Source: Ranitomeya imitator (lineage: Eukaryota). From it: 64,000 nucleotides of DNA. The stretch covers positions 134,726,001-134,790,000 of the forward strand of contig NC_091291.1 in assembly GCF_032444005.1 (NCBI RefSeq), given 5' to 3'. Below the pieces are notes generated by a model. The model saw only the letters and a list, made by a program, of their open reading frames with translations, was not told the DNA's origin and made no database searches. This document shows, in pieces, positions 6,969 to 60,930 of the stretch. A program made the position numbers and the translations under genes. The number at the start of each line of letters is the position of its first letter. Position 1 is the stretch's first letter.

Positions 6969-8259
6969 TATATATTGCACATCAGCAGTATCAGTAGGAT
7001 AGCTTCACATCTCTGGAGCTTCACATCTTGGTACTATGGATTCCCTCCATTGACATAACATGTGTAAAGATAATGGCTATACCTTGTTTAGTATATGTTT
7101 TTCACATGCTTATTATAAATTTTTTCACATATCTTATGTTTGTATGTTCAGATGCCCTTGAAAAGCGCCATATAGCCGAAACGTTGTAATACGTACCTGT
7201 TCATCATCTGTTGGTTTAATAAGTTACTTTTTTTGGATTCACCTTATCCTACGTATCCTCATTCAGTGACGAAGGTTCTTCTTTTTACAATGGAAGGACC
7301 ACAAACCGAATATCACAGATACGTCACAATGAAAGCTGGACTGAAGTAGTAAAAGTCAGAACAAATGAGCCGCATTATTCACGTGTGGTTCCTGTTTATT
7401 AATAGACGGGATGACGGCACAGTTTGTGCCACGTGTTTCAGGAAGCAGTATTTCTGTGTCTTGGTTTCTTTGTAGAGTCCAGTCATCCATTGTGTCACAT
7501 GAGAATATCTTAATACTTTGGGCTTGTCTGGGCCTGTAAGAGAATGCCACTCACGGAGAGTATTGTACCATGCATGCCATGCTTCACTTGCTCGCATTTG
7601 CCTTCTATACAGACACTATTCACATCTCCTAACAGTTACCTTTAGTAAAATTTGGAATAGAAGATAGAAGTATCCAGAATAAAGACAACATCAGTAGATA
7701 ATACATACTACCACCTAATTGGACAGCCTTTTTAGAGATACACCCCATTGACAAGTGGAATGGAAACAACCAGTTGACATTTTATTTGTGCATTTCCAGG
7801 AATAATATCAGAGACATGGCACAACACGGAAGAAAAGGGTTCACAGCGCTGTTATTTTTATGGGGAATTTATGCATCTACTGAATCAGACCTGCACTCTA
7901 TGGAGAACAGTATTGAGATCCACGTCTTAATCATTGAATTCTCATTCCCCCGCGTCTATAATATCTGTCCCCATTGCCCCTCCCCAGGTGTATAAGGGCT
8001 CACTGTTACCAACATGGTCCTGTAATAGGATCCCCCTGGTGTAACAAGTCCATTAATGACATTTCGTCCTCCTGAATCTTCCTCCATCTCCTGTTAGTGA
8101 TATTATTGAAAAGTGGGAGGAACTGCAGCAACTCAGCCACGAAGTGGAGACCCCATAATGTTACAGAGTGGGGGCAGAGTACTGAGGATCAGAGGTTAGA
8201 ATAGTCACCACCGCTCTGCTGACCCCATAACTGCGGAGTCCAGACCTCCTCTGTTATTA

Positions 8260-11000: not shown

Positions 11001-11499
11001 TTGAAATCCTTCCCAGAAGAGTCAGACCTGTTTTATCTGCAGAGGGCCGACTCCATATTAATATCTATAGAATGAAAGCTCCAGTAGGTGGAATGTGGAG
11101 GGGGCACATACTTAGGAGGAACTTTAGGAACTATGAGGCCAATGCTTGGGTGAGTGACTGTGTGTTGCTGGAATGAGTGCTGATAGGAGAGCGAGATGAA
11201 GATATGAATTGCTACTTCTATATTTCTGTACAAGATTATTCAAAATTTGGTTATTTTCACCATCCTTCTCACCCCTTATAAATACCAGAGATCCTCGCAC
11301 AGCCAGCTTTCTACATAGAAATCATGGGGCCCCATAGCAGAAGTTTTAATTCGACCCCCCTAAAAAAAATAGATAAATAATTGTCGGGGTCAAAGGAAAG
11401 CATACCTCACAACTTTCCAGACTTTACATAGTAATTTTCCTCTTGCTGAAGTCCTAGATTACTTTTTCATTTCCCCATAAAGTATGATACCAACAAAAG

Positions 11500-11905
11500 G
11501 GCCCCCCAAACACAGTATGATACCCCATAGTGAATTCTTCCACATTAGCCTCCATATGCACAGTATAATGACCCTACTGTATCCCACCTCAACTCCCAAG
11601 GCAAAGTATGGTGACCCCAACACAGTATGATCCCCCAACTGTGACCCCTACACAGCCCTCCATGCAATATAATGGCCCCCACACCTCACCATACTGTATA
11701 ATGGCCCCCACACAGCCCTCCACACAGTATGATGGACCCCACGCAAATCTTCATACTGTATATTTGCTTGCATACAGTATAATGCCCCCCATATAGCCCT
11801 TCAAATACTATAATGGCCCTACATAGCCTTCCATATAGTATAATGAGCCCCATATAGTCCTCCATATAGTATACGTCGCCCCCATAATCCTCCATGTAGT
11901 ATAAT
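11500..11905. repeat. Degenerate ~30-bp minisatellite (cccccatatagcctccatatagtataatg-like)
   Basis: Repeated tataatg/ccccac/ccatatag units; reverse-complement relative of the 25318-25738 array. Confidence 0.7.
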
Positions 11906-12021
11906 GGGCAGTACGTGGCGCAGTGGTTAGCACAGCAGCCTTGCAGCGCTGGGGTCCTGGGTTCAAACCCCACCAAGGACAACATCTGCAAAGAGTTTGT
12001 ATGTTCTCTCCGTGTTTGCGT

Positions 12022-12052
<31 letters not shown>

Positions 12053-12185
12053 ACATTCTAAAGACATACTGATAGGGAATTTATATTGTGAGCCCCAACG
12101 GGGACAGCGATGATAATGTGTGCAAACTGTAAAGCGCTGCGGAATATGTTAGCGCTATATAAAAATAAAAGATTATTATTATTAT
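11906..12185 (+). mobile_element. tRNA-derived SINE (V-SINE/SINE2-like) with L2-type tail
   Basis: A box TGGCGCAGTGG, B box GGTTCAAACC, central GTGGGTTTCCTCCGGGCACTCCGGTTTCCTCCCAC domain, 3' stem-loop AGCGCT...AGCGCT and (ATT)n tail. Confidence 0.85.
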
Positions 12186-12539
12186 AATGCACTCCTATGG
12201 TTCTCCATAGAATCTAATGCACCCCCATAGTCATCCAGTTGAAGTTTCTGCTGGCATCGGCGGGCACCTGACCCAGCAGGCCCGGTTGCAGCGGTGACTA
12301 CTGCAACCATGATTGTTTTGCCCCTGGTTACGGCAGGTTGCAGGCTTGTCGGAAGAAGTAGGCCTTCAGGTTCTAGAAGGTTTTCATGGTAGATGAGAGT
12401 GTTGTATGTTGAGATAGAGAGTTCCATAGTAGGGGGGATGCACGGGAGAAATCTAGTGTGAGATTATGGGAAAAAGTGATTAGAGGGGTGTAGAGAAGGA
12501 GATCTTGTGAGGATCAGAGGTTGCGTGCAGGTAATGTCA

Positions 12540-13660
12540 TGGTTAAAGTTTTGTACTGGAGTCTAAGGGCAATGAGGAGCCGATGAAGGGATTGACAGAG
12601 AGTAGGGGAATAGCGGGGGGACAGGTGGATTAGTCGGGCAGCAGAGTTTAGAATAGATTGGAGGGGTGCGAGAGTGTTCGAGGGGAGGCCACAGAGCAGG
12701 AGGTTGCAGTAGTCAAGGCGGGAGATAATGAGGGCATGGATTGGGGTTTTTGCAGATTCTTGGTTAAGTAATGTAGGGATCTGGGAAATATTTTGGAGTT
12801 GGAGTCGGCAGTGGTAGAAAGGGTTTGGATGTGTGCTTTGAAAGAGAGATCAGTGTCAAGGATTACCCCGAGGCAGCGAGCTTGTGGGACTGGGGAGAGT
12901 GAGCAGCCATTGACTTTGCTGGCCAGGTCTGTTGGGTGTGTTGAGTGAGATGGGGGAAAGATGATGAATTCTGTTTTGTCAATGTTAACTTTTAGAAATT
13001 GAGCAGAGAAGAAGGATGGAATAGCAGACAGACATTGTAGGATGCTGGTTAGAAAGGAGGCAATGTCAGGTCCAGAGAGATAGATCGGTGTCATCAGCAT
13101 AGAGGTGATACTGAAAGCCATGGGACTCTATGAGCTGTCCTGGGCTGAATGTGTAGATGGAGAAGAGCAGGGGCCCTAGAACTGAACCTTGCGTGACATC
13201 GACAGATAAGGGGTGAGATGAAGAGGTGGTGCGTGAGTGGGAGACTCTGAATGTCCGGTCTGTTAGGTAAGAGGAGATCCAAGATACGGCCAAGTCTGTG
13301 ATGCCAAGAGATGAGAGGGTCTGTAGTAAGAGGGAATGGTCCACTGGGTTGAAGGCAGAGGACAGGTCCAGGAGGAGGAGGACGGAGTAGTGTCGCTTAG
13401 CTTTGGCGGTTAGTAGGTCATTAGTGATTATAGTCGGGACAGATTCAGTCGAGTGATGCGGTCATATAGGGAGCAGGAGGAGAGATGATAGGACAGTTCA
13501 AGATGGACGTGTTGTTTCAGTATTTTTGATTCATAGGGGAGAAGTGATATGGGGCGATAGCTAGACACAGAGGATGGGTGTGATTGAGGCATGTTTGATG
13601 CATGAGAGGAAAGCACCAGTTATTAGTGATGGCTGAAGAGATGGGTTAGGGTTGGGAAGA
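12540..13660 (-). mobile_element. Degenerate L2 LINE fragment
   Basis: ORFs 12648..13121, 13066..13344 and 13428..13616 are frameshifted L2 RT pieces ([17 protein letters not shown]). Confidence 0.85.
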
Positions 13661-14999
13661 AGACTGAGGATTTAGCCAGCTTCAGAGCAGTGCTCGCAGG
13701 AGCTACAGCAGATCATGCAAGTACTCTGCTCCTTGATTACGGGATCGGCCACCGCTGATGGGCTGCAGAGGTGGCCGGTAACATTGTCAAAGAGCAGAAA
13801 ACTTGAGAATGAAAAAGTTTGTTTTACCAGCAGGTTGCGATTTTACCCATTTAAGAAAATGAGACGAAGCTGGCCAAATATATGAGCTAGCTACTTGCTA
13901 AGCTGACAAGTTTATTCAGTAGGAAAGAGGGAGTCAGGCTGCTGCGAAACCATTCACTTCCGTGGGTGTAAATGGAGAAACGCTACAGATATTGTGAGAA
14001 CCGTGGCCTCAAATCTGACCAATGGAATCATCAGCCTGGAGGTTGTATGAATTTGTGTGAGATTCTCCGGTTTCCGCCAAACACTCCAGAAACATACAAT
14101 ACTGAAAGTTTAAGTAATAGCCTGTGTACATTGCTACAGAATATGTTGGTGCTATGTATATAAAGTAATTATATGTGTTATATATGCAAATAAAGATATG
14201 ATCGTGCGGTTTAAACTAGTACTCCGCGAGCTGCAACAGAAAATTATGACATTTCTATATAGAACTTCTAAGCGTCATCCACTTGTTGGAAAAGAGACAA
14301 GGCCACAACAGACATCCAAAAAAGTCACAAAAGAGTATACGGGGCCCGAACTCTTCTTTACTAGTGCAGATCTCACAATGTGAACTTTGGCGCCATCTAT
14401 TGTAGAGTCTGTGGTACTGACACCACTACATTCAGCATGGACCCACCATAGAGGAATCCCACGGCACTGCTATGAGTCCAGCACTGAGAATGGGATGGGG
14501 TCCAAAATTCTTATTCTATTTTTTCTTTTTTTTTTAAAAAAAGGGTCCAACCAACCCAGAGTTTTTAGACAAAGCCAAGAATTCATCCACTGAGGATGCA
14601 ACCTGTTCAGAAATACTGGCACACCGCTTATACTGCGTGCTGACATTACCGGGGCTATAACCATCTAACCACCATTAGATCCATGCTAAGATTAAGGTTT
14701 CTGTGTATGACCCTGGTTTCATAAATCCTGCAGGATTAGATGCCTGCACCGAGCTAATGAAGTACAATATCCTTGTGGGCAGCGGGTGCACAGGCAGAGG
14801 GCACAGGTCCTATGTGCGGATGTCAGAGCAGGGCACCATGATGCAACTGGATTTTAGTGTATTTATATCATGTGTCAGTTTGGGATATCAAGACCCCTGG
14901 TTAGCCTGACACTTACCTCTACAAATCAGGCATGAAAAAAAATCATTCATCTGAAATTAACCAAAAACGATTAAAAAAAAGGGGTCAAAACACCATCTC

Positions 15000-23761: not shown

Positions 23762-23849
23762 ATGTATCTCGGCATAGTCCTGCTCATATTCTCCTACTTG
23801 GAGCCCCATAATTGTCAGACATGTTCCCCAGCGTATGACCGTCTACCGG
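23762..23849 (+). CDS. ZP gene A exon: signal peptide
   Basis: MYLGIVLLIFSYLEPHNCQTCSPAYDRLP; CCG G|GTAAG. Confidence 0.85.
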
Positions 23850-26800
23850 GTAAGATGAACCCTTTGAATCGGCTGCTAATCTGAGTTGGATGTTATGTGA
23901 GCAGCTTTTATGTTTTTTTTGTTGTTGTAGAAAACAGTGATATATCTGTTACGTGCGGATCCTCAGATATTCACCTGTCCATAAACATCTGCCCGGTTTA
24001 TTTTGCCAATTTTCTTCCCAATGAGCTTGCCTTGAATGGAAAACATAACTTAACGGAGTGCAAGGGTCTCATGGATATCTCAACAGATCCACCGGTCTTG
24101 AATTTCACTCTACATCTCGATGACTCTAGTAATAATACTTGTGGAAATTTCATTGACGTGAGTACTGACAGTATTAAGAAGTTAGAAGGTTTTTTTGTTT
24201 TTTTTTTTCTATACAGGAAAATGTTCAATTTATTAAAAGTTTGAGCTCAGATATAGCCGAACTAAATTTACGGGACTGATAGACATCCATCCAGGTGGTC
24301 CTATAGAAGTGTAAGGAGTGGTGTCTCAGCATGGAGGCCAGTGCTCCATTCACGCAGATGATGTTGGGATCTACAGGGTCCAAAATTATTGGACCTACAA
24401 CAAAATTAATCAATGTATAAAAAAAAAAATAGCAAATGTGTCACCTACAGCATGGATAGGTTAAATTTGTATGTAATGGACAACCCCTCTAAAGGTTTTT
24501 TCCCATGTTGGACATTGTGATTAATGTATGTAGTACGAACACCCCTTTAAAGGGGTTGTTGCATCCTTTCCAAAATGGAGTCAGCACATGCACTTAATAA
24601 TTTACAGAACCCCTATAGTAACGAAGGGGGGAGCCGAGCATGTACGGACACCACTCTGCTGGCAACAGGACCCAGTGATTGAGGTATAACCGGAGGAATC
24701 ATGTGGATAGGCCAGAAATGTCCGAGATGGGTCTACCCCATCATACTGGACATACAATAACACACCCCAGAGAGCTGTGGTGCATACGTGTGCCGAACGT
24801 ATAATAGGCTATCAACTCTTCAAAGGATAAGTGATTTATGTGCAGATCAGCAAGGTCCTGACTGCTGGGAATCCCCATAGACCCTGATAAAGGGGCTCTG
24901 AAATGCCAGTCACCGTCATTCCATTCATCCTCCCTAGGTCTGCCGGATATAACCAAGCACAGAACGGTACTGAACAAATCGCACAAATTCATTTCAGTGC
25001 CCATTTTTCAGCAGTGGTCAGAGCTCCACCGATCTGCAAGTTATCCTTTAGGTGGTTGTTATAGATTTTATATTGGAATTCTTTAATATGACTCTTTGCC
25101 TCCACAGATTATAAATGAGGTTGGCGTAGGTCAATTCAGTGCCTATTCAAATGTCCAAGCAGTCAGCATCTCGGGATTTGTGGATTCATTGCCAATAGCC
25201 GAAATGGGACTTGTGTCCTACAGCACAAATCTATACTACAACTTCTCCTGCCACTACCCGCTGCAGTACATATTAAACAACACCGAGCTGCTAACGTAAG
25301 TATGTGGACACGTTTTATTTATTATGCTCTTATGTCGAGGAGTATGGGGAGTGCATTATACTATGTTGAGGACTATGGAGAGTGCCTTATACTATATGGA
25401 GAACTATGGGGAGTGCATTATACTCTTATGGAGGACTATGGAGAGTGCCTTATACTATATGGAGAACTATGGGGAGTGCATTATACTCTTATGGAGAACT
25501 ATGGGGAGTGCATTATACTATATGGAGAACTATGGGGGGTGCATTATACTCTATGGATGACTATGGGGATACATTATACTGTATGGAAGAGTTTGAGCAG
25601 TGCATTCTACTATATGGAGGACTATGGGGAGAGCATTATACTATAGGGAGTGCATTATACTCTATGGAGAACTATGAGGAGTGCATTATATTCTATGGAT
25701 GACTATGGAGGTGCATTATACCATATGGAGGACTATGACAACTTTGCAGGGGTAGTTGAGGTGGGGTACAGTAGGGTCATCATACTGTGCATGTGGAGGG
25801 TACTGTGAAGGAATTCACTGTGGGGGTATCGTACAGTGTTTGTGGAGTACTTTTGTTGGCATGTTGCAATGAAAGTGGAATCTAGGGCTTCCGTATGAGG
25901 AACACACTAGGCTGACGGGTATCTACTGTGTATAACCAGCTTTACGTTTTTTTCCTATTAAACCTTTCAATTATATCTAATCATTTCCCATAGTTCCTTT
26001 GGAGCGGTCGCCATTAACAACAACAGTGGTAGCTTCATCAGTACTCTCCGGATGGGGATTTTCACGGTATGTGGGATCAAAAGTCATCGCTAAAACTTAT
26101 CAGTAGTCTTTTTCTCTTATAATTTCTTAGATTTTACCCAAGTGTTTTTGGCAGTGTATAATTGTACGATTGTTAACTAGACCATATACATTGTTCATCA
26201 AAGGATGAAAACTTCACCACAGAAGCAACTGGAAATGGCAACACTTATGAACTGAGGAAAAAAATATACGTGCAAGTAGCCAGCAATAACACGGCTATGA
26301 GGTACAGCATGGGTTCAACTGATGAATGTGTAATTTCTTTGTTGATTTTTTAGTCACATCGTTTCATTGTCAACTATATTGTCACCAAAATGTTTCCAAA
26401 GGTATAGTTGAATAGGCTGCTCCAAAAGGTTGGGCCCATTTAGACAAGTCTATAACCGAGAACTAGAGTTCCTAGGAATCCTCAATTGTCCAATATTGGC
26501 TCGTCCAAACAAGCCAACAATCAGCTGCCGAACGAGAAAAAAGCTCGTTCAACAGGTGAGATTATTTTTAAGTTTGCCTTAGGCCTCATTCAGATGTCCG
26601 ATTTTTGTGTACGAGTGCTATCCGTGTTTTTCAAGGATAGCACTCATACCCATGATAGTCTATGGGACCATCCACAGGTCCTATTTTCTTCCACAGACCA
26701 AGTGGTCTTGGGCAAATATTGGAGCCATGTCTGATTTTGATCTGAGGGTCGGATCAAAATCGACAATGAATGTCAACAGGTCTGTAAAACAAAAATTGCA

Positions 26801-29800
26801 CTGCATTCGGATGAAATGCGAGTACAGTCCGATTTACACAAACTGTCAGAATGGAGAAGACTCAAATAACACTCTGATCAGAATAATTGGTCAGATTTTC
26901 TCGTATGTGAAAAAAATCAGACAAGAAAATGAGGACTAAAAAGTCATCATTCTTGGCAGCACATTACCCGTGTAAACAGGACATGTGCTGCCTGTATAAT
27001 ATTCTGTGTGCTGTCGGCCAGTCTATTAAGGTCTATTAAGTTACCGCCGATCAACTTGTATGTATCCAATTGGCCATCGTTTAACAGCCATGGTTGGGCA
27101 GTCTAAATGGGCCTTAACTCTACTGGTAGAAGGTGAATTTTATGTTAAGCCTGCCAAGCCATCTTGCCTCTTCAAGGTAAGTGACTCGACCAGGGCTTAC
27201 AACTTCCGTATCCTCTGACCAACTGGTTGCAAAGAACGCACCTCCTGACAACCCTATGGAAAAGACTGGTTATTAGCCAGTTTATCCCTAGGAAGCAGTT
27301 TGTCCAACAAGATCTAGCAGAGGCAGCCAAACCTTGATTGGGTACATGGAGCAGTTCTCAAAACTAAAACCGTGACTAAATCTACGATAAGTAGATGGTT
27401 TCCACTGACCGTGAAATCGTAGTGTTTTGGACCTGGCACAACACTATGGCTTCTACTGCCCAAGGCTGTGTTCACATGTGTAGTAGTTATCTCCATCTTT
27501 TGACAAACAGAAATATAATGATTCAGTATAGGACCCATTCATTTGAATGAGGATCGAAAAGTCCTAAGAGGTCTTGACTGCAATCCAGCTAAAATCCAAC
27601 CAAAAACAGTTAGCAACTGGATCCATTTTTTTTCAACAGTGAAACATTTGTGTTTTGGGGAAATTAATCTTAATGGAAGGTCATCTGTAAAGTCATCCAT
27701 TAACGGATCAATTATTTTAGCACTGTGCATGCTCTCAGGTAGGCATTAGTTAGCGTTCACATGGGCAATACGATTTTGTCCAAACATGCAGTTTTATTAC
27801 TTTCATAAAACTCCAAGGGATTCAAACAGAACAACCTCATCTGGGCACAAAGGTATTACAGCAAATAAACAGATCATTCATCAGGCACATATCACATATA
27901 TCACTGTGGGCTAACCCAAACAGATTACAGTCCTTTCTCCAGGAGCAAACTTTACACACAGAAGAGGTAGTGTCTTACCAGCCTCGGTATCACCTTCAAC
28001 CTGAGCACCAGCAGTTTCCAGCCCCAAACAGAAGTGTTCAACTCCATACACAGCACACACTAAACAGACTGCAGCTGCCATAAGTTACTCTGCAGCTCCA
28101 ACACACAGACTGCTCAGCTTTCCTAGCTGACCTGAGCAGTCTGCATTCAGAGAGAGACCTAAGCTTGTCTCTCTCCCAGCTACAGCTCACATTTTGGCTG
28201 GTCACTCACCAGCTTCAACACACTCGACTATGCTCAACATCGCCAGCAGACTGAGATCTACCAGGTGAGCACATGCCTTGGTTCTTAGTCAAAGCTAGCC
28301 AAGTGTATCGAATCAGGACATAGTGCTAGAATTTAACCAACTACTACCTGGCTTTCTAACTATACCTGGAACACTAGAAAGGTGCAGAGACTCCTCTAGT
28401 AAAAACAGATCCGTTACAAATAAAACAAAAAGGTATGTAAAACGGAAACCAAAGTGTGCATCCGGAGAAGTGAACAGAGGCTAATCATCATAGATCGGTA
28501 TCTGCATAGCGTTTCACTGTATTTGCAAAGATATTATATATGTTGGGCATAAATGTTGTAAATAAAATTGTGCTAATTTTTTAAACTTTTTGAGAATTTG
28601 TCTAAACAAAATCAGGTTAGAAAATCTTCTGCTGATTCCCTGTATTTGATATTAACTGTATGACAATTTTGCACAATTACTCTACAAATCCTTTTTTATT
28701 TTTGTTTTATTTCTAGCTACTATGTTAATCTGGATGAATGTTTCGCCACACCTGGTCCTATTATCACAACTGTGGGAAATGATAGCTACTCTTTCTTCAC
28801 AGGGTAATGTAATGCCTGTTTCCAGAGTTAAACTAAGTAGACTGTAGTTTCTATTGTACTGGAGACATTACCTAATCTATGTATTTCATCTTGATTCATT
28901 ACAGCTGTAACAAACAAAACAAGACGACCATTATTCAAAATGGGCAAGCCACGACTGCAAAATTCAGTTTTGAGGCATTCCGATTTCTGCAGCACAGTGG
29001 CCAGAAAACGTCGTCAATATATCTGCACTGCTTCACCCGCCTCTGTCTGGCTGATCAATGTGCTGTAAGGGATCTTCTATTGGATCATACTTATGTAATA
29101 GGGACATAAATCTCAGGTCTACATTATCCACATATGTTGCTCATATCTATAAGGAGAAACAACCCTAGAAAAATGGACTTATATATAAATATCAGACAAA
29201 GTATATTGAATATAAAATTGCCTTTATTAAATACACATTGGCAAACGGTAATACTAATTAAAAAGAAAAATGTGCACGCGTCTGGACAATTTCTCCAGCA
29301 AAAATGTATATCAATTATATAAAGGTTTTAAGAAATCCTAAAATAGAAATCGGACCAAAGGATAATATAATTTATATCTGTATTGCTGACAAATATATAA
29401 TGATATAAGAGCCCCCCCCAAATAAAAATATGATGCTTAAGAAATTTTATGGATTCATGAAATCATAAAAAATCCTAAAAAATGTTTGTAGTTGTCAAAC
29501 TCATTTAAATAACAAATCTCAACGTAATATATAGTGCAAAAAGCGCATAGTTATCATTAGGAATAAAACTTGATAGATGGGACTTAACTCACAGTGAATG
29601 GCAAGAAAGTGAAACAAAAACTTCACCATTAATGTGGATCCATATTGGATTGTGAGGGTGCAGTAATGCAAACAAAAAAATCCCACAAATATATAAGGGC
29701 AATTCTGGGGCAATATATCTTTAAGGTCCGGTTCCGGGAGAGTCACAGACAACGCAAACACCCCGACGCGTGTTTTATATTCAATATACTTTGTCTGATA

Positions 29801-32800
29801 TTTATGTATAAGTCCATTTTTCTGGGGTTATTTCTGCTCTTCTTCTTGAGTGGTTATCACTCTTTGTCACAAACACTTTCTGGCTATCACTGTTATTGAA
29901 ATATATATATACATGCTTATATTTCTATGATTTAATTTGTGTATACCCATTAAGTGTTGTTTTACTCATATCTATAAGCAGTCAAGTCAGGTGCATTTTT
30001 AGTGTTTTTCACCAGAATTACCGGCATACACCAAGGCCCCTGTAAATGAAAAAGTATACACATGTTCACTAGGTTTCCCCACATACAAAATATAAGCGGA
30101 AAATATAAAAAATGTCCAGTTTTAGAACAATATAGAACAGCGATTCTTATAGCCTGTGTATATAGTTTTGCATTTTAGGTATAGCAGTATTTTACAAAAT
30201 GGGAAAATGCTGATAGAAATGTTTTACCAACATCCATATTTCCTGTCTAGAAATGCAGCGGCTCACGAAAAAGGAGAGAAGCTAATGCTAATAAAGAGCA
30301 GGTGATGGTTTCATCCGGACCCCTCTATGTAACAGGTACATGTCTGCAACTGAGATTAAAGGGGACCCATCACTTTTAGGACTCCAAACCACAACGTTTA
30401 GCTGACAGTGCCGCTCCCTTGCTTTCTAAAGGTGCCATAGCAGATTCTGGATTTTGCTTAGGGAGAACTTTATCTCCCCTGTATGTATAACAATAATGTT
30501 TTTGTAGTAAAGCAGGTGGAGATGATCGGGAAAGAAATCTGACATGGTTAACGTAGCTGAAGACAAGGGCTTGTAATGACATACTGTCCTCTGGGATGTC
30601 AATCAAATTAATTGGGCAGAATTAGGGTGCAACAGTCCTCTCTCCCATTCACTGCAAGGAGGTTATTAACATACAGCATGCACAGTAATTAAAGGGACTG
30701 TCCAGGACTAAAGCCCCAAATACAATACAGATAGTTGTCGGCCAAGTGATGTTTGGGTAGTAGCTAATTTGCCCAACTGTCCCATACACAGGAGCGCTCC
30801 TGTGTTCTCTAAACAGACCTTCTGCTAGACTCCTGCCGCAGCGGACTATCTCTCGAAGGACAAAAGCAAAGTCAGTCCTAAATTGGAAATACTGGATCCT
30901 TATCTCTCCCCACAATCTTGTCGGGGACCTCTATACACCCTAGACTGTCGGACGATCTTGTGGATATTAGCGGGTTTGGCTGACAACAGTCTAATGTGTA
31001 TGGTAGTCTTAAGATCCTTAGGATAAGTCATCGGAGGGATGACATCAGACATCCGGCACCTCCACCAGTTGGCCATATCCCGGTCTTGCATCTGATGGAT
31101 GTTCATAGTGTACAGATACCATTCACATGAGGGGCACCATCAGCTAGTGATGGCAGTTTGGAGACCAAAAAGCTACTGATGAATCCTCTTGGCGGTTGGC
31201 ATCGGCGTAATAGAACATCATATGACATTATTCATAAACTTTTTTTTTGCATGAGTCACAAGTTCAGGGTCCAGTGCCCCCCGTTTGGTAAGAATTCTGT
31301 TCTGTATCTTCATTTTCAGTACAATAAATGAGGTAAAACTAAAGCCAAACAGAACAGCAGAAAACTAGGATCTTTTTTATATAAATAATTACCAGTCGGA
31401 AGCTTTTTGCGTGGATTCTTCCCACTGTTCCCTGCTGAAAAGATATGACATGTCATCTATTCGTGTCCTGGTCCAGACGCGTAACATAATCCGAAAAACC
31501 CAGGTTTCTCCACCAACCGTGTATCTTTCATCCACTAAATTTAATTGTTTTTGCTTCCATCAGAATTTTACATTAGGAGTGTTCCCCGACATTTATTTCG
31601 GACTGAAGTCTCCTTCGCAGGCCACTGCATGTGCATAGAGGATCATACATTGGCACATTGACTCCCATAGTAAAAAAAAGTAACTTTTTACTGTGTCCCT
31701 ATATACAAAAACCCTAAAGAAATGTAAAACAGATGACATAGTAAAAAAAAAAGGTGTGTGTTCACGCTTTTTCATAGAAGAACTTGGGCACCATGGTTTG
31801 AGAACGACTGGAACTTCTGCCCTTATCAGTTACCAATACTTCTCATCTCAATTTTCATCATTTCTAAGGTTACTTGAACACTTTTGGTAATTTTTCTGAT
31901 AGTTTCTGCTGCATCTGCTCAATGCCAATTTCAGGGAAGAGGTGGCTAAAATTCCCTGGAATAGAAGGCACTCTAAATGGCACTTGTGATTGGCTTTTTT
32001 GATTTACTTTTGTTTTATTAAAGGAGTTTTTCTTTCACTCCACCCTTGAAAATTGCCCACTGTGCCTAGTATTTATGTACTTTTAACCTTAATCATGACC
32101 ATTTGTAATTCGTGGCATCCCTAGCTGTACTGGATTGGTTTCCTGAAAGAAACTATACAGAAAAAAATATCCCATTTTTTTTCCCCCTAGTTATTCATAG
32201 GAAATGTTAATTTCTAATTGGCTACTAAGATACAACAAAGCATCTGCGTAATAAAATAAAACTCGGCATGATATTGTCTTTTATCTGTTTTGCAGGGGAA
32301 ACGGGTGAATGGTCTGGATTTAACAGTGGTGGTATGTGTTCCTCTATGTACAGGTCCTTCTCAAAAAATTAGCATATAGTGTTAAATTTCATTATTTACC
32401 ATAATGTAATGATTACAATTAAACTTTCATATATTATAGATTCATTATCCACCAACTGAAATTTGTCAGGTCTTTTATTGTTTTAATACTGATGATTTTG
32501 GCATACAACTCCTGATAACCCAAAAAACCTGTCTCAATAAATTAGTATATTTCACCCATCCAATCAAATAAAAGTGTTTTTTAATAACAAACAAAAAAAC
32601 CAACAAATAATAATGTTCAGTTATGCACTCAATACTTGGTCGGGAATCCTTTGGCAGAAATGACTGCTTCAATGCGGCGTGGCATGGAGGCAATCAGCCT
32701 GTGACACTGCTGAGATGTTCTGGAGGCCCAGGATGCTTCAATAGCGGCCTTAAGCTCATCCAGAGTGTTGGGTCTTGCGTCTCTCAACTTTCTCTTCACA

Positions 32801-34337
32801 ATATCCCACAGATTCTCTATGGGGTTCAGGTCAGGAGAGTTGGCAGGCCAATTGAGCACAGTAATACCATGGTCAGTAAACCATTTACCAGTGGTTTTGG
32901 CACTGTGAGCAGGTGCCAAGTCGTGCTGAAAAATGAAATCTTCATCTCCATAAAGCATTTCAGCCGATGGAAGCATGAAGTGCTCCAAAATCTCCTGATA
33001 GCTAGCTGCATTGACCCTGCCCTTGATGAAACACAGTGGACCAACACCAGCAGCTGACATGGCACCCCACACCATCACTGACTGTGGGTACTTGACACTG
33101 GACTTCAGGCATTTTGGCATTTCCTTCTCCCCAGTCTTCCTCCAGACTCTGGCACCTTGATTTCCGAAGGACATGCAAAATTTGCTTTCATCAGAAAAAA
33201 GTACTTGGGACCACTTAGCAACAGTCCAGTGCTGCTTCTCTGTAGCCCAGGTCAGGCGCCTCTGCCGCTGTTTATGGTTCAAAAGTGGCTTTACCTGGGG
33301 AATGCGGCACCTGTAGCCCATTTCCTGCACACGCCTGTGCACGGTGGCTCTGGATGTTTCCACACCAGACTCAGTCCACTGCTTCCTCAGGTTCCCCAAG
33401 GTCTGGAATCGGTCGTTCTCCACAATCTTCCTCAGGGTCCGGTCTCCTCTTCTCGTTGTACAGCGATTTCTGCCACATTGTTTCCTTCCAACAGACTTAC
33501 CATTGAGGTGCCTTGATATAGCACTCTGGGAACAGCCTATTTGTTGAGAAATTTCTTTCTGGGTCTTACCCTCTTGCTTGAGGGTGTCAATGATGGCCTT
33601 CTTGACATCTGTCAGGTCGCTAGTCTTACCCATGATGGGGGTTTTGAGTAATGAACCAGGCAGGGAGTTTATAAAAGCCTCAGGTATCTTTTGCATGTGT
33701 TTAGAGTTAATTAGTTGATTCAGAAGATTAGGGTAATAGGTCGTTTAGAGAACCTTTTCTTGATATGCTAATTTATTGAGACAGGTTTTTTGGGTTATCA
33801 GGAGTTGTATGCCAAAATCATCAGTATTAAAACAATAAAAGACCTGACAAATTTCAGTTGGTGGATAATGAATCTATAATATATGAAAGTTTAATTGTAA
33901 TCATTACATTATGGTAAATAATGAAATTTAACACTATATGCTAATTTTTTGAGAAGGACCTGTATTTTCCTACATATAAAAGGACCCTAAAGCAGCTTTT
34001 ATACAAGGGCTGGACAATTTCCTTGATACGCATAACATTGCTGGTTGAAGAAACAACATGATTATTGCCATCAGCTTTGTCCCGTTATTACAGCCCAGCC
34101 CCCTTCACTTGAGTAGCGATAACCTGTAATACCAGGCACAGCCTGCTGACGGGTGGCGCTGGTTCTGGGCAAAAAAAAAAAGAAAAACTCGCCAATAATT
34201 TGTAACTATTTTTTCCTGATTATTTTACATCATATTAATTTGCCTGTTTTTGTTGATTTACAGGGACAAATCTTCTGACCGGAAACCATGCAGGACTTGC
34301 TGTTGGTCTCATCGTCGCTGCCGTCATAAGAGCTTGA
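23762..34337 (+). CDS. ZPLD1/cupulin-like ZP-module protein A, 371 aa; join(23762..23849,23931..24157,25108..25295,25994..26066,26204..26301,28717..28803,28905..29064,30251..30335,32296..32331,34264..34337)
   Basis: Signal peptide MYLGIVLLIFSYL; ZPLD1-like motifs LALNGKH, YNFSCHYPLQY, SFISTL, LDECFATP, FSFEAFRF and IYLHCFTRLC; furin site RKRR; EHP VMVSSGPLYV; hydrophobic C-terminus. All introns GT-AG, phases consistent, 1116 nt open. Confidence 0.9.
23931..24157 (+). CDS. ZP gene A exon: ZP-N first part
   Basis: 227 nt, NSDISVTCG...TCGNFID; same length as 48541-48767. Confidence 0.92.
25108..25295 (+). CDS. ZP gene A exon: ZP-N second part
   Basis: 188 nt, IINEVG...FSCHYPLQYILNNTELL; same length as 50928-51115. 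Confidence 0.92.
25318..25738. repeat. ~32-35-bp minisatellite in ZP gene A intron
   Basis: About a dozen copies of ggagtgcattatactatatggagaactatgg-like units. Confidence 0.9.
25994..26066 (+). CDS. ZP gene A exon: linker/IHP
   Basis: 73 nt, SFGAVAINNNSGSFISTLRMGIFT; CATAG|...ACG|GTATGT. Confidence 0.9.
26204..26301 (+). CDS. ZP gene A exon: ZP-C start
   Basis: 98 nt, DENFTTEATGNGNTYELRKKIYVQVASNNTAM. Confidence 0.88.
26581..26938. mobile_element. MITE in ZP gene A intron
   Basis: TIRs aggcctcattcagatgtccgatttt / aaaatcagacaagaaaatgaggact. Confidence 0.55.
28717..28803 (+). CDS. ZP gene A exon: ZP-C (DECFATP)
   Basis: 87 nt, YYVNLDECFATPGPIITTVGNDSYSFFT. Confidence 0.92.
28905..29064 (+). 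CDS. ZP gene A exon: ZP-C end
   Basis: 160 nt, CNKQNKTT...FEAFRF...LHCFTRLCLADQCA. Confidence 0.92.
30251..30335 (+). CDS. ZP gene A exon: furin site and EHP
   Basis: 85 nt, KCSGSRKRREANANKEQVMVSSGPLYVT; CTAG|...ACA G|GTACAT. Confidence 0.88.
32296..32331 (+). CDS. ZP gene A 36-nt micro-exon (phase 1-1)
   Basis: TTGCAG|GG GAA ACG...GGT G|GTATGT; ETGEWSGFNSG; positional equivalent of 59293-59316. Confidence 0.7.
32351..33962 (-). mobile_element. Full-length Tc1 (DD34E) transposon with intact transposase, in ZP gene A intron
   Basis: TA|CAGGTCCTTCTC...GAGAAGGACCTG|TA; ~197-bp near-identical TIRs; uninterrupted ORF (MGKTSDL from 33633 to 32629, 334 aa) with FSDESKF, QHDLAPAH and, 34 residues later, PIENLW. 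Confidence 0.95.
32629..33633 (-). CDS. Tc1 DD34E transposase
   Basis: Open frame with paired-like HTH and complete DD34E triad. Confidence 0.92.
   Translation of the reverse strand: MGKTSDLTDVKKAIIDTLKQEGKTQKEISQQIGCSQSAISRHLNGKSVGRKQCGRNRCTTRRGDRTLRKIVENDRFQTLGNLRKQWTESGVETSRATVHRRVQEMGYRCRIPQVKPLLNHKQRQRRLTWATEKQHWTVAKWSQVLFSDESKFCMSFGNQGARVWRKTGEKEMPKCLKSSVKYPQSVMVWGAMSAAGVGPLCFIKGRVNAASYQEILEHFMLPSAEMLYGDEDFIFQHDLAPAHSAKTTGKWFTDHGITVLNWPANSPDLNPIENLWDIVKRKLRDARPNTLDELKAAIEASWASRTSQQCHRLIASMPRRIEAVISAKGFPTKY
34264..34337 (+). CDS. ZP gene A last exon: short hydrophobic C-terminus
   Basis: TTACAG|GG ACA AAT CTT...GCT TGA; TNLLTGNHAGLAVGLIVAAVIRA*; aligns with the LHGTLTGLIVGIII region of gene B. 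Confidence 0.75.
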
Positions 34338-34364
34338 CTCTAAAATGTCTTTAATGTTGCCGTA

Positions 34365-34495
34365 AATAAATGACTAAGAGTGCACAAAGCGTATAATGAT
34401 GATACATAAATTACAAGGATTGCGTACAATGATAGACCGCTGATTGTAAAAATTGTAAAAAAATATTGTAAACTGTATGATTCCTGTGTAATAAA
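34365..34495 (+). terminator. Candidate poly(A) signals of ZP gene A
   Basis: AATAAA at 34365-34370 and 34490-34495. Confidence 0.5.
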
Positions 34496-48323: not shown

Positions 48324-48417
48324 ATGATTACACTTGTGGTTCTTCTACTTGGTTTAGCCGGGAAAGAATGTCTTGGAAACTACTTAAACTGCTCATCCCT
48401 TTATGCTCGATATCCAG
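48324..48417 (+). CDS. ZP gene B exon: signal peptide
   Basis: MITLVVLLLGLAGKECLGNYLNCSSLYARYP; CCA G|GTTAG. Confidence 0.88.
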
Positions 48418-60400: not shown

Positions 60401-60930
60401 TCGTTTCAGCACATTTTGCTTCGGCGCTCTCTGTCGGGATTGTAAAAGATGAGTTCTAACGTCAAACATCTGGTGATGCACCGTTCTGGTCTCATGACCG
60501 CTGCGACAAATCACTGGCCCTAGAGGTCAGGTGACTGGAGAATTGGACATCATCTCTTGCGGTACCGATGGAGACCTCCGGAGCAGTCTGCCCTGGAGTG
60601 CCGGAAGTATAAGTGGGTGGATATTCCTCATTTTTGAATTGTATCTTATTTTATCCATTATCTGCCTACAGAGTGATGTATGTTAGGGTCAGACGACCCT
60701 CGTTAACTGTTCACATTAATGAAGATTAATCTTCGATTTTTCTCTTCCCAGGCGTTTCTGAAGTCAATCAGCTTCATGGGACGCTAACGGGACTCATCGT
60801 TGGAATCATCATTGCCGCTTTGCTGGGGGTAGCCCTCGCCATTGCCAGCCTGATTTTTTACAAAATGTCCCGACTCCGGAGTCAGAATAATAAGAGCGGG
60901 GTGGACAACTTCTCCTACACTGGGAAATAG
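48324..60930 (+). CDS. ZPLD1/cupulin-like ZP-module type I membrane protein B, 425 aa; join(48324..48417,48541..48767,50928..51115,54130..54202,55082..55179,56541..56627,56710..56881,57533..57668,59293..59316,60752..60930)
   Basis: Signal peptide MITLVVLLLGLAG; same ZP cysteine pattern and exon phases as gene A; furin site RRRR; EHP VTVSSGPITT; TM GLIVGIIIAALLGVALAIASLIFY; tail ending DNFSYTGK*; 1278 nt open. The donor after 57668 is hidden by Ns. Confidence 0.9.
48541..48767 (+). CDS. ZP gene B exon: ZP-N first part
   Basis: 227 nt, DSDIMVNCG...ACGNNIA|GTAAGT. Confidence 0.92.
49170..49844. mobile_element. Solo LTR (675 bp) with 5-bp TSD in ZP gene B intron
   Basis: TTGGG|TGTCATG...CATGACA|TTGGG. 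Confidence 0.85.
50928..51115 (+). CDS. ZP gene B exon: ZP-N second part
   Basis: 188 nt, IEDDVG...FSCYYPLQYFLNNTELL. Confidence 0.92.
51521..53245 (-). mobile_element. 5'-truncated CR1 LINE with uninterrupted RT-encoding ORF, antisense in ZP gene B intron
   Basis: 528-aa ORF 51635..53221 ([39 protein letters not shown]); 3' (TATGTTAC)n octamer tail at 51521-51546; no endonuclease domain. Confidence 0.93.
53668..53707 (-). ncRNA. Penelope-type minimal type I hammerhead-like motif (U3-A8 variant core)
   Basis: Minus strand AUGC UUGAAAA A GACUCA ggau UGGGUC GAA AC GU U GCAU: stem I, stem II and palindromic stem III (AACGUU) all formable. Confidence 0.5.
54130..54202 (+). CDS. ZP gene B exon: linker/IHP
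   Basis: 73 nt, SSANVAVNTNNGTFISTLSMQLFI|GTAAGT. Confidence 0.92.
55082..55179 (+). CDS. ZP gene B exon: ZP-C start
   Basis: 98 nt, DENFTVPLQFNGSALSLKKNVYVQVTATNLTA. Confidence 0.92.
56541..56627 (+). CDS. ZP gene B exon: ZP-C (DECFATP)
   Basis: 87 nt, FYVHLDECFATPSPLLTTDVASKFSLLS. Confidence 0.92.
56710..56881 (+). CDS. ZP gene B exon: ZP-C end
   Basis: 172 nt, CSTANKT...FETFRF...LHCATRLCQPDTCAAINQ. Confidence 0.92.
57533..57668 (+). CDS. ZP gene B exon: furin site and EHP
   Basis: ACNAVSATSAAPSSQRRRRAAEVSASEGTTESVTVSSGPITTRDE; 3' end abuts the N run. Confidence 0.85.
57669..58244. other. Two N runs (57669-57838, 57882-58244) in a CT-rich tract
   Basis: Uncalled or masked bases flanked by (TTTC/CT)n low-complexity sequence. 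Confidence 0.95.
58479..58927. mobile_element. T2/Kolobok-like MITE
   Basis: tta|agcccccgtcacac...gtgtgacggggcct|tta; CG-rich internal repeats. Confidence 0.7.
59293..59316 (+). CDS. ZP gene B 24-nt micro-exon (phase 1-1)
   Basis: TTGTAG|AA TCC ACT GGG AGT CAC CCC AGC G|GTGAGT. Confidence 0.7.
60150..60600 (+). mobile_element. Probable very degenerate Tc1 remnant
   Basis: CpG-rich tract with decayed similarity to Tc1 coding sequence (gactggagaattgg...catctc near the W..VIFSD region). Weak. Confidence 0.35.
60752..60930 (+). CDS. ZP gene B last exon: TM helix and cytoplasmic tail
   Basis: CCCAG|GC GTT...AAA TAG; GLIVGIIIAALLGVALAIASLIFY KMSRLR...DNFSYTGK*. Confidence 0.9.

What the first reader, a model, noticed from the sequence alone, without database searches (positions are those of the whole stretch)
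34264..34409. Gene A may have converted a transmembrane anchor into a GPI-type signal; a fossil TM and tail remain in its 3'UTR
Seen: gene A ends ...FNSGGTNLLTGNHAGLAVGLIVAAVIRA*, a ~13-residue hydrophobic run with no cytoplasmic tail and small residues (N/S/G) ~24-27 aa upstream. Paralogue B has a 24-aa TM and tail at the same position. Reading in frame past A's stop gives *L*NVFNVAVNK*LRVHKAYNDDT* (34335-34409); single-base reversions (TGA>GGA, TAA>TTA, AAT>ATT x3, TGA>AGA) would give GLLIVFIVAVIKRLRVHK, a TM end with basic stop-transfer residues. Known: ZP proteins need a TM or GPI anchor for secretion and assembly; UMOD, GP2 and tectorins are GPI-anchored. Inference: a nonsense mutation created a GPI-anchored (apical, released) paralogue. 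Caveat: six substitutions must be assumed, and AT-rich UTR can mimic this pattern; early pseudogenisation is an alternative.
Basis: partly seen in the sequence, partly recalled or inferred. Interest (0 to 1): 0.75.

Follow-up and report, generated by a model that had tools for sequence, protein, structure and literature searches.

The report
Frog ZP gene's anchor shortened long ago
A poison-frog zona-pellucida-type gene does end in a short, tail-less hydrophobic stretch that looks like a lipid (GPI) anchor signal and descends from a true membrane-spanning anchor, but the change is ancient and shared by many frogs, and the supposed "fossil" anchor in its 3' untranslated region is no better than chance.

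Summary
The sequence facts hold. Gene A (10 exons, 23762-34337, +) encodes a 371-aa protein identical to Ranitomeya imitator XP_069597181.1, "zona pellucida-like domain-containing protein 1". It ends ...NSGGTNLLTGNHAGLAVGLIVAAVIRA-TGA. Tandem paralogue B keeps a full transmembrane (TM) segment and a 22-residue tail.

A-type orthologues of Xenopus, Rhinophrynus, four pelobatoids and Mixophyes keep TM plus basic tail. All eight complete hyloid orthologues have a 10-18-residue tail-less hydrophobic end behind a conserved [N/S/V]-[S/N]-G-G cluster (Dendropsophus differs), which fits the textbook GPI-signal layout. So the conversion dates to the hyloid ancestor. Ranoids changed differently.

The present TGA is a later TGG>TGA change. 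It is shared with Dendrobates tinctorius and R. variabilis and removes two residues. The next in-frame stop (TAA, 34341-34343) is the old hyloid stop.

Beyond that stop no fossil is demonstrable:
- Orthologues contradict the proposed reversions.
- Half of random non-coding 54-nt windows pass the same six-change test.
- Similarity to TM/tail coding DNA is at background.
- Hyloids lack about 66-71 nt here (dendrobatids about 91-93), which points to deletion.

dN/dS of 0.16-0.29 excludes a pseudogene. GPI anchoring remains an inference, because no predictor or RNA-read tool was available.

The parts
23762..23849 (+). Gene A exon 1 (start codon, signal-peptide-like N-terminus MYLGIVLLIFSYL...)
   Evidence: Exact mapping of P0159 residues 1-29. 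The donor GTAAGA at 23850 is seen.
23931..24157 (+). Gene A exon 2, first part of ZP-N
   Evidence: Pfam ZP-N, E 4.7e-05. Splice sites read. 54% identical to B exon 2.
25108..25295 (+). Gene A exon 3 (rest of ZP-N)
25994..26066 (+). Gene A exon 4
26204..26301 (+). Gene A exon 5
28717..28803 (+). Gene A exon 6 (ZP-C)
28905..29064 (+). Gene A exon 7 (end of ZP-C, ...LCLADQCA)
   Evidence: Pfam Zona_pellucida, 36.4 bits against a cut-off of 24.6. Splice sites.
30251..30335 (+). Gene A exon 8: furin-type cleavage site RKRR, then the hydrophobic patch VMVSSGPLYV
   Evidence: Both are conserved in all orthologues.
32296..32331 (+). Gene A exon 9, a 36-nt mini-exon (G)ETGEWSGFNSG carrying the small-residue cluster (candidate omega site S346)
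34264..34334 (+). Gene A exon 10, coding part: spacer TNLLTGN, then the hydrophobic end HAGLAVGLIVAAVIRA
34335..34337 (+). Present stop TGA, derived from TGG (Trp) of other hyloids
   Evidence: Phyllobates, Rhinoderma, Engystomops and Hyla all have TGG here. The Dendrobates tinctorius and R. variabilis proteins also end ...IRA.
34338..34343 (+). CTC TAA: the former last codon (Leu in Phyllobates) and the ancestral hyloid stop, now the first 6 nt of the 3'UTR. This is the only demonstrable ex-coding relic.
   Evidence: The stop position is shared by five hyloid genomes (TAA/TGA/TAG at the same column).
34344..34409 (+). The claimed 'fossil TM end and tail': ordinary 3'UTR, alignable among hyloids, with no significant likeness to TM/tail coding DNA
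34480..34495 (+). Conserved 3'UTR block ATTCCTGTGTAATAAA carrying the likely poly(A) signal AATAAA at 34490-34495. It is also present in five other frog genomes, including Mixophyes.
60752..60930 (+). Gene B last exon: TM (about 60790-60861), 22-residue cytoplasmic tail, stop TAG 60928-60930
   Evidence: TM and tail are near-invariant in 20 frog B-type proteins.

Best explanation
Gene A is the Ranitomeya imitator copy of the 'A-type' frog paralogue of a ZPLD1-like, single-ZP-module protein. It lies in tandem with the 'B-type' paralogue.

The shared precursor architecture is signal peptide, ZP-N, ZP-C, furin-type site, external hydrophobic patch and membrane anchor.

Shown:
- The ancestral A-type anchor was a TM of about 23 residues or more plus a short basic tail. 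Xenopus, Rhinophrynus, Spea, Pelodytes, Pelobates, Leptobrachium and Mixophyes keep it.
- In the ancestor of hyloid frogs the second half of the TM and the tail were lost. The data favour deletion(s), not a point nonsense mutation.
- What remains is 10-18 uncharged hydrophobic residues ending ...G/R-M-W-x-stop, behind a conserved [N/S/V]-[S/N]-G-G cluster (seven of eight; Dendropsophus has L-S-G-G farther upstream).
- In the Dendrobates + Ranitomeya lineage a further TGG>TGA change removed the last two residues. CTC TAA became the first six bases of the 3'UTR.
- The gene is under purifying selection.

Inferred:
- The new C-terminus works as a GPI-attachment signal. The best candidate is omega at S346, with N-S-G-G as omega-1 to omega+2, spacer TNLLTGN and hydrophobic tail HAGLAVGLIVAAVIRA.
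- The precursor would then be lipid-anchored on the apical surface until cleavage at RKRR releases the ZP module for polymerisation, as in uromodulin or the tectorins.
- The rest of the 3'UTR is ordinary UTR and holds no readable fossil of TM or tail.
For: Identity of the gene:
- A search with exon 2 alone found the family.
- P0159, XP_069597181.1 from R. imitator, 371 aa, equals the exon model exactly.
- Pfam finds ZP-N and ZP-C.

Orthology:
- The A clade (21 frogs, SH-aLRT 96) and the B clade (20 frogs, 98) are each monophyletic and each reaches back to Ascaphus.
- Mixophyes A lies inside the neobatrachian A clade.

C-termini:
- TM-type A proteins have uncharged runs of 23-30 residues plus 7-15 charged-tail residues.
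- Hyloid A proteins have runs of 10-18 residues plus 0-4 residues (mis-scored Hyla; its end GTSVTVGLIIAIFLGMWF is read).
- All 20 B proteins have 26-28 plus 15-23.

GPI layout: the four-region description in PMC2571997 is met with omega = S346.

Stop history: TGG at the TGA position, and a shared stop two codons later, in Phyllobates, Rhinoderma, Engystomops and Hyla DNA. The ...IRA end is also seen in D. tinctorius, R. variabilis and a second R. imitator assembly.

Deletion: the mid-TM to poly(A)-block distance is 149-176 nt in hyloids and 242 nt in Mixophyes.

Selection: dN/dS is 0.21-0.33 over the whole gene, 0.16-0.29 in the mature part and 0.45-0.72 in the propeptide (hyloid pairs).

Expression of a tail-less form elsewhere: P0003, a ranid protein, is held on contigs of at most 2,032 nt and is complete. 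For an intron-rich gene such a contig can only be spliced mRNA.
Against: - No GPI predictor and no experiment were available. The GPI call rests on a rule-of-thumb layout.
- The tail carries an Arg two residues from the end (four in Rhinoderma and Leptodactylus).
- Propeptide dN/dS of 0.45-0.72 shows weak constraint.
Support is indirect: RefSeq models of four dendrobatids and the cross-species conservation of the exon.
- The route of the loss is unresolved. An out-of-frame, decayed relic of the Y-K-M-Y juxtamembrane codons at the very start of the UTR cannot be excluded.
Confidence: 0.6

Rival explanations
1. A point nonsense mutation in gene A cut a full TM, and the second half of the TM and the basic tail survive in frame in the 3'UTR (34338-34409), six substitutions away from an open reading.
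For: - The in-frame reading contains V, F, V, A, V and a K/R/H-rich stretch. The joint pattern, with at least 4 basic residues in 7 codons, occurs in only 0.8% of random non-coding windows.
- A's hydrophobic run is homologous to the first half of B's TM.
Against: - TGA comes from TGG, and TAA is the stop shared by all hyloids.
- GCC GTA (A V) is CCA GAA (P E) in Rhinoderma and TCA GAA (S E) in Hyla.
- The hydrophobic criterion alone is met by 50% of random windows.
- Post-stop identity to B's TM/tail is 31%, which is background.
- Local alignments to five TM-bearing sequences are at background.
- Hyloids lack about 66-71 nt here, dendrobatids about 91-93 nt.
- The truncation predates the hyloid radiation, where pairwise dS is 0.6-0.87. 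About 0.3-0.4 changes per neutral site are expected on this lineage, roughly 16-22 substitutions in 54 nt rather than 6.
Confidence: 0.03
2. Frameshift relic. A deletion of about 19 nt in the TM-coding part shifted the frame in the hyloid ancestor. The hyloid stop T-AA is then the misread Y-K codons (TAT AAA), and the first 20-35 nt of the UTR (T AAA ATG TCT T...) are a decayed, out-of-frame remnant of the juxtamembrane Y-K-M-Y-R-R tail.
For: - MAFFT places a 19-nt gap exactly there.
- Ungapped register 19 is raised against Mixophyes, Spea, Pelodytes and gene B: z 1.0-1.9 for Rhinoderma + Hyla, and up to 3.8 for dendrobatids against Mixophyes.
- The motif AAA[A/C]TGT is shared with AAA ATG TAT / AAA CTG TAT / AAA ATG TCC of the TM-bearing genes.
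Against: - It is not significant after 150-170 offsets are tested.
- The dendrobatid signal is inflated by the derived GCT TGA.
- Xenopus shows nothing.
- Rhinoderma prefers register 45, an in-frame 15-codon deletion with the same stop as Mixophyes (z 3.8).
- Local alignment scores are at background.
Confidence: 0.25
3. The short hydrophobic end is not a GPI signal. It is a degenerate propeptide, serving as a weak or transient membrane tether or nothing at all. It is tolerated because furin cleavage at RKRR discards it anyway, so the protein is simply secreted.
For: - Propeptide dN/dS of 0.45-0.72 against 0.16-0.29 in the mature part.
- Arg near the C-terminus.
- Length and sequence of the end vary among hyloids and ranoids.
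Against: - A hydrophobic, tail-less end of 10-18 residues is kept in all eight complete hyloid proteins, and a small-residue cluster at a constant distance in seven of them, over a radiation with pairwise dS of 0.6-0.87.
- From general knowledge of ZP proteins, membrane anchoring of the precursor is needed for proper assembly.
Confidence: 0.3
4. Gene A is an early pseudogene, or its true last exon lies elsewhere.
For: None beyond the short C-terminus. RNA reads could not be consulted.
Against: - The ORF is intact and all ten exons have canonical splice sites.
- dN/dS is 0.21-0.33.
- The same exon, frame and stop region are found in five hyloid genomes.
- No other TM-like exon lies between A and B.
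- RefSeq models in four dendrobatids agree.
Confidence: 0.04

Closest known systems
ZPLD1 / cupulin (single-ZP-module protein of the inner-ear cupula)
   Same: - Same name given by NCBI to A and B.
- Same precursor plan as described for cupulin: signal peptide, ZP module, consensus furin site, external hydrophobic patch, TM, short cytoplasmic tail (PMC4219815).
- Gene B, and the A-type genes of early-branching frogs, have exactly this plan.
   Different: - Hyloid A-type proteins, including this one, lack the second half of the TM and the whole tail.
- Orthology of the frog A/B pair to mammalian ZPLD1 was not tested. The nearest fish hits carry the names ZPLD1 or si:dkey-103g5.3.
GPI-anchored ZP-module proteins: uromodulin, GP2, alpha- and beta-tectorin
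   Same: ZP module followed by a cleavage site and a C-terminal GPI signal. Release from the apical membrane drives matrix assembly (PMC4755741 and PMC6881170, listed). Gene A's end has the same layout by rule of thumb.
   Different: - They are not close in sequence to A; none appeared among the hits.
- Their GPI anchors are shown by experiment, whereas A's is inferred.
- In A the GPI-like end can be traced to a TM within the same orthologue group.
Gene B of this window (B-type frog paralogue)
   Same: - Tandem neighbour on the same strand with the same exon plan and splice phases.
- Exons are 54-65% identical.
- Its last exon is homologous to A's up to the middle of the TM.
   Different: - B keeps a 28-residue uncharged run and the tail KMSRLRSQNNKSGVDNFSYTGK, which is near-invariant in 20 frogs.
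- Its clade has shorter stem branches than A's.

Membership tests
ZP-module (zona pellucida domain) precursor proteins | ZP-N domain | tested here: met
   Exon 2 alone gives PF23344 at E 4.7e-05, 24.1 bits, just under the 24.7-bit whole-protein cut-off. The full-length identical protein P0159 carries precomputed PF23344.
ZP-module (zona pellucida domain) precursor proteins | ZP-C domain | tested here: met
   Exon 7 gives PF00100 at 36.4 bits against a cut-off of 24.6. P0159 carries PF00100.
ZP-module (zona pellucida domain) precursor proteins | Consensus furin-type cleavage site after ZP-C | tested here: met
   R-K-R-R is encoded in exon 8 (30251-30335). R-[KR]-[KR]-R is conserved in all aligned orthologues. 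Cleavage itself was not tested.
ZP-module (zona pellucida domain) precursor proteins | External hydrophobic patch between cleavage site and anchor | tested here: met
   V-M-V-S-S-G-P-L-Y-V follows the furin site by about 10 residues. The V-x-V-S-S-G-P-I motif is conserved in A, B and the outgroups. The assignment is by position and conservation only.
ZP-module (zona pellucida domain) precursor proteins | N-terminal signal peptide | tested here: inconclusive
   A hydrophobic N-terminus MYLGIVLLIFSYL is present. No signal-peptide predictor was available.
ZPLD1 orthologue group | Orthology to vertebrate ZPLD1 (cupulin) | not tested
   There is only the NCBI name and clustering with fish proteins named ZPLD1 or si:dkey-103g5.3. 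No mammalian ZPLD1 was in the trees.
ZPLD1 orthologue group | C-terminal TM plus short cytoplasmic tail | tested here: not met
   Gene A has 13 uncharged hydrophobic residues plus R-A and no tail. Gene B and the early-branching A-type proteins meet the feature.
GPI-anchored proteins (C-terminal attachment signal) | Small residues at omega-1 to omega+2 (omega among C, D, G, N, S) | tested here: met
   N-S-G-G with omega = S346. The same cluster ([N/S/V]-[S/N]-G-G) is present in seven of eight complete hyloid orthologues. The criteria come from PMC2571997.
GPI-anchored proteins (C-terminal attachment signal) | Spacer from omega+3 to omega+9 | tested here: met
   T-N-L-L-T-G-N, seven residues, moderately polar.
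GPI-anchored proteins (C-terminal attachment signal) | Hydrophobic tail from about omega+10 to the C-terminal end, with no cytoplasmic tail | tested here: met
   H-A-G-L-A-V-G-L-I-V-A-A-V-I-R-A, mean Kyte-Doolittle 1.86. Mean over the last 20 residues is 1.44, against -1.6 to -0.2 in B-type and 0.06-0.66 in TM-type A proteins. Caveat: an Arg at position -2.
GPI-anchored proteins (C-terminal attachment signal) | Positive call by a trained predictor (NetGPI, PredGPI, big-PI) | not testable with these tools
   No such predictor exists in the tool set or on the script machine.
GPI-anchored proteins (C-terminal attachment signal) | Release by PI-PLC, or a chemically shown anchor | not testable with these tools
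   This is an experiment.

The most novel reading that the evidence does not exclude
One member of an ancient tandem pair of ZPLD1-like matrix genes switched from a transmembrane to a GPI anchor at least twice independently in neobatrachian frogs. One switch was in the hyloid ancestor and one or more in ranoids, each by a different lesion. The sister copy B stayed frozen. This would be a natural experiment on how the mode of membrane tethering tunes release and assembly of a ZP matrix. In dendrobatids the signal was trimmed again by a TGG>TGA change.
Probability: 0.4. Interest if true: 0.45.

Novelty: new variant of a known kind. Interest (0 to 1): 0.3.

Why it matters
ZP-module proteins are tethered either by a TM or by a GPI anchor, and the type of tether affects where and how they are released and polymerise.

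Here both states occur within one orthologue group. The ancestral state survives in living frogs, and an unchanged tandem paralogue serves as an internal control. That gives a clean comparative system for asking what the anchor type does, using anchor swaps between Mixophyes or Xenopus A-type and hyloid A-type proteins.

For the scan itself the lesson is methodological. An AT-rich 3'UTR can nearly always be 'repaired' into a hydrophobic reading. Orthologue DNA settled the question here: the real relic is six bases long, not seventy.

Tried and rejected
1. DNA BLAST and tblastx of A's 3' part against B's 3' part gave nothing beyond short chance words.
2. tblastn of B's last exon against the whole window found no alternative TM exon for A. 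The only hit was A's own last exon, first half of the TM only.
3. Local alignments were run with the 60 nt after the hyloid stop of five hyloids, against the TM-half/tail coding DNA and against the 3'UTR starts of Mixophyes, Spea, Pelodytes, Xenopus and gene B. No consistent signal appeared.
4. Ungapped offset profiles gave two competing registers (19 and 45). Neither survives multiple testing.
5. The last exon of the Pseudophryne A-type gene was not found within 10 kb downstream of its truncated model. The Leptodactylus protein was not on record for a DNA look-up.
6. Rfam matched nothing in the window.
7. The scan's earlier findings held nothing for this place or these words.
9. The joined spliced protein was not sent to any search tool. 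Searches used single exons by reference and then database protein ids. P0159 happens to equal the joined model.
10. The N runs in gene B (57669-57838 and 57882-58244) were left as they are. B's exon 8 end, and any mini-exon there, are therefore not described.
Full report
**What is in the window.**
Two paralogous single-ZP-module genes lie in tandem on the + strand. Gene A has ten exons, all with canonical splice sites:
- 23762-23849
- 23931-24157
- 25108-25295
- 25994-26066
- 26204-26301
- 28717-28803
- 28905-29064
- 30251-30335
- 32296-32331
- 34264-34337

They sum to 372 codons. Exons 2 and 7 hit Pfam ZP-N and ZP-C. Exon 8 encodes R-K-R-R followed by the hydrophobic patch VMVSSGPLYV.

Gene B starts near 48324. 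Its exon 8 runs into the assembly gaps at 57669-58244, which I left untouched. Its last exon is 60752-60930.

The joined protein model was not submitted to any search tool. I searched with exon 2 by reference and went on with database protein ids.

**Check of the observation.**
- the last exon from 34264;
- the end ...FNSGGTNLLTGNHAGLAVGLIVAAVIRA;
- the stop TGA at 34335-34337;
- the in-frame continuation L * NVFNVAVNK * LRVHKAYNDDT * up to 34409;
- in B, a full TM followed by KMSRLRSQNNKSGVDNFSYTGK.

A's hydrophobic run is homologous to the first half of B's TM (50% identity).

**What the gene is.**
The exon-2 search against 1.84 billion representatives, followed by a word search with the best full-length hit, placed A among frog proteins that NCBI names 'zona pellucida-like domain-containing protein 1'.
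- P0159 (XP_069597181.1, Ranitomeya imitator, 371 aa) is identical to my exon model, including the ...VIRA end. The window is therefore R. imitator.
- A maximum-likelihood tree of 49 proteins gives one A clade (21 frogs, SH-aLRT 96) and one B clade (20 frogs, 98). Each reaches down to Ascaphus, so the duplication predates crown frogs.
- The characterised relative is cupulin/ZPLD1. Its precursor plan is signal peptide, ZP module, furin site, external hydrophobic patch, TM and short tail (PMC4219815).

**The anchor across orthologues.**
B-type proteins are almost invariant: 26-28 uncharged residues plus a 15-23-residue charged tail in all 20 frogs.

A-type proteins fall into three states:
- *TM plus basic tail.* Xenopus, Rhinophrynus, Spea, Pelodytes, Pelobates, Leptobrachium and the neobatrachian Mixophyes (...LMLYKLYRRRR).
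- *Short and tail-less.* All eight complete hyloid proteins have 10-18 hydrophobic residues and at most four more. They end G/R-M-W-P/A/F/L in Rhinoderma, Leptodactylus, Engystomops, Hyla and Dendropsophus, A-A-W-L in Phyllobates, and R-A in Ranitomeya and Dendrobates.
- *Ranoid forms.* Other tail-less ends occur in Lithobates and a Rana-like transcript (...GLNF.....LKCF) and in Hyperolius (...KNTLKTY).

Mixophyes keeps a tail that is plainly homologous to the pelobatoid one, and it sits inside the neobatrachian A clade. The hyloid and ranoid losses are therefore most simply independent.

**History of the stop codon.**
I fetched the DNA of the last exon and its downstream flank for ten orthologues. 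The alignment shows:
- Ranitomeya: AGA GCT TGA CTC TAA
- Phyllobates: GCA GCG TGG CTC TAA
- Rhinoderma: AGA ATG TGG CCC TGA
- Engystomops: GGA ATG TGG GCC TAG
- Hyla: GGA ATG TGG TTC TAA

The present stop is thus a TGG>TGA change. The next in-frame stop (34341-34343) is the stop used by all other hyloids.

The ...IRA end is also found in R. variabilis, Dendrobates tinctorius and a second R. imitator assembly. It is a fixed change of that lineage, not an assembly error. It removed two residues. The only demonstrable ex-coding DNA in the UTR is CTC TAA (34338-34343).

**The claimed fossil (34344-34409).**
Five lines of evidence speak against an in-frame relic of the TM end and tail.
1. The first two 'reversions' are contradicted by the stop history above.
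2. The hydrophobic look is partly derived. Ranitomeya GCC GTA is CCA GAA in Rhinoderma and TCA GAA in Hyla. The hyloid in-frame reading was about x-V-F-x-V-P/S-E-N-x-K.
3. The test is weak. Of 117,170 random non-coding 54-nt windows of this same window, 50% can be made into 11 hydrophobic plus 7 open codons with six or fewer changes. Only the post hoc demand for at least four basic residues lowers this, to 0.8%.
4. Post-stop identity to B's TM/tail in codon register is 31%, against 51% before the stop. Local alignments of the 60 nt after the hyloid stop against the TM-half/tail coding DNA of Mixophyes, Spea, Pelodytes, Xenopus and gene B are at shuffle level.
5. The truncation predates the hyloid radiation. 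Pairwise dS is 0.6-0.87 among hyloids and about 1.3-1.5 to Mixophyes. A neutral relic on this lineage should carry roughly 16-22 changes in 54 nt, not six.

**How the TM half was lost.**
Two anchors were measured: the conserved mid-TM codons (GCT GCC ATC ATA GG) and the conserved UTR block with the poly(A) signal (ATTCCT....TGTAATAAA). Mixophyes has 242 nt between them. Non-dendrobatid hyloids have 171-176 nt and dendrobatids 149-151 nt. The deficit of about 66-71 nt is larger than the 45 nt of missing coding sequence, which points to deletion rather than a bare nonsense mutation.

The exact lesion is not resolved. MAFFT and ungapped profiles give two competing registers:
- *Register 19.* A frameshifting 19-nt deletion. 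The hyloid stop T-AA would then be the misread TAT AAA of Y-K, and the first UTR bases would be an out-of-frame, decayed relic of Y-K-M-Y-R-R.
- *Register 45.* An in-frame 15-codon deletion that keeps the stop used by Mixophyes.

Neither survives correction for the number of offsets tried.

**Is the end a GPI signal?**
By the four-region description in PMC2571997 the protein fits:
- N-S-G-G as omega-1 to omega+2, with omega = S346;
- spacer TNLLTGN;
- hydrophobic tail HAGLAVGLIVAAVIRA running to the C-terminus, with no cytoplasmic tail;
- mean Kyte-Doolittle over the last 20 residues of 1.44, against -1.6 to -0.2 for B-type and 0.06-0.66 for TM-type A proteins.

The small-residue cluster sits at the same distance from the tail in seven of the eight complete hyloid proteins; Dendropsophus has L-S-G-G farther upstream. 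It is absent from the TM-type proteins. A run of 13 uncharged residues is too short for a stable TM helix (general knowledge).

This is an inference. No trained predictor was available, the tail carries an Arg near its end, and the propeptide is only weakly constrained (dN/dS 0.45-0.72 among hyloid pairs).

**Not a pseudogene.**
The ORF is intact. dN/dS is 0.21-0.33 overall and 0.16-0.29 in the mature part across hyloid pairs. The same last exon is conserved in five hyloid genomes. A ranid tail-less form is held complete on contigs of at most 2 kb, which for this intron-rich gene must be mRNA.

**Limits.**
- The scan's earlier findings held nothing for this place.
- A literature search for ZPLD1 together with GPI and transmembrane returned only unrelated papers. 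I know of no description of this switch.

**Verdict.**
The GPI-like reading of the C-terminus is reasonable and now rests on comparative evidence. The 'fossil TM and tail' is not supported. This is a new variant of a known kind (ZP proteins with TM or GPI tethers), of modest interest.

Noticed in passing
window 32629-33696 (- strand), in the last intron of gene A: An intact 355-aa Tc1/mariner-type transposase ORF. Pfam gives DDE_3 at 69.5 bits and HTH_Tnp_Tc3_2 at 55 bits. It has no internal stops, so it may be a young copy.
   Followed up: partly
window 25321-25737, intron 3 of gene A: A tandem array with a basic period of 31 nt (also seen as 63 and 94 nt), about 10 copies, 77-87% matches. 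It produces long spurious ORFs in three frames.
   Followed up: partly
window 57669-57838 and 57882-58244: Two N runs sit just after the readable part of gene B exon 8. About eight residues of B, seen in R. variabilis P0189 as ESTGSQPS between ...TTRDE and the last exon, have no visible coding DNA here. They may lie in the gap. The gaps were not filled.
   Followed up: no
L006 9437-9472 and 9805-9843 (Hyla sarda); L005 7382-7417 and 7748-7783 (Engystomops): The 36-nt mini-exon 9, which carries the small-residue cluster, is present twice in these two hyloid gene models. In Hyla the two copies encode the same 12 residues. This looks like tandem exon duplication within the propeptide.
   Followed up: no
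P0152 (Mantella aurantiaca, 640 aa): This RefSeq model fuses an A-type N-terminal part to a complete B-type protein. It is probably a read-through annotation artefact. It does show that the A-then-B tandem order is kept in a ranoid.
   Followed up: no
L003 about 11000-11040 (Mixophyes A-type last exon): The Mixophyes tail (...YKLYRRRR-stop) ends earlier than the pelobatoid tail (...YKMYRRRAAETK-stop). Its UTR start, GG TGA AAA ATG ACC, resembles the pelobatoid GCT GAG ACA AAG TGA C with about 5 nt missing. The tail may have been shortened by its own small frameshift.
   Followed up: partly
window 8001-14000: There is strong positive GC skew (0.35-0.39 in 2-kb bins at 8-10 kb and 12-14 kb) in a region upstream of gene A. 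The cause was not examined.
   Followed up: no
window 34378-34388 and the matching columns in L001, L002, L005, L006: The UTR block GAGTGCACAAA is conserved in all five hyloids despite frame-shifting indels around it. It is therefore conserved as DNA or RNA, possibly a regulatory site, and not as former codons.
   Followed up: partly
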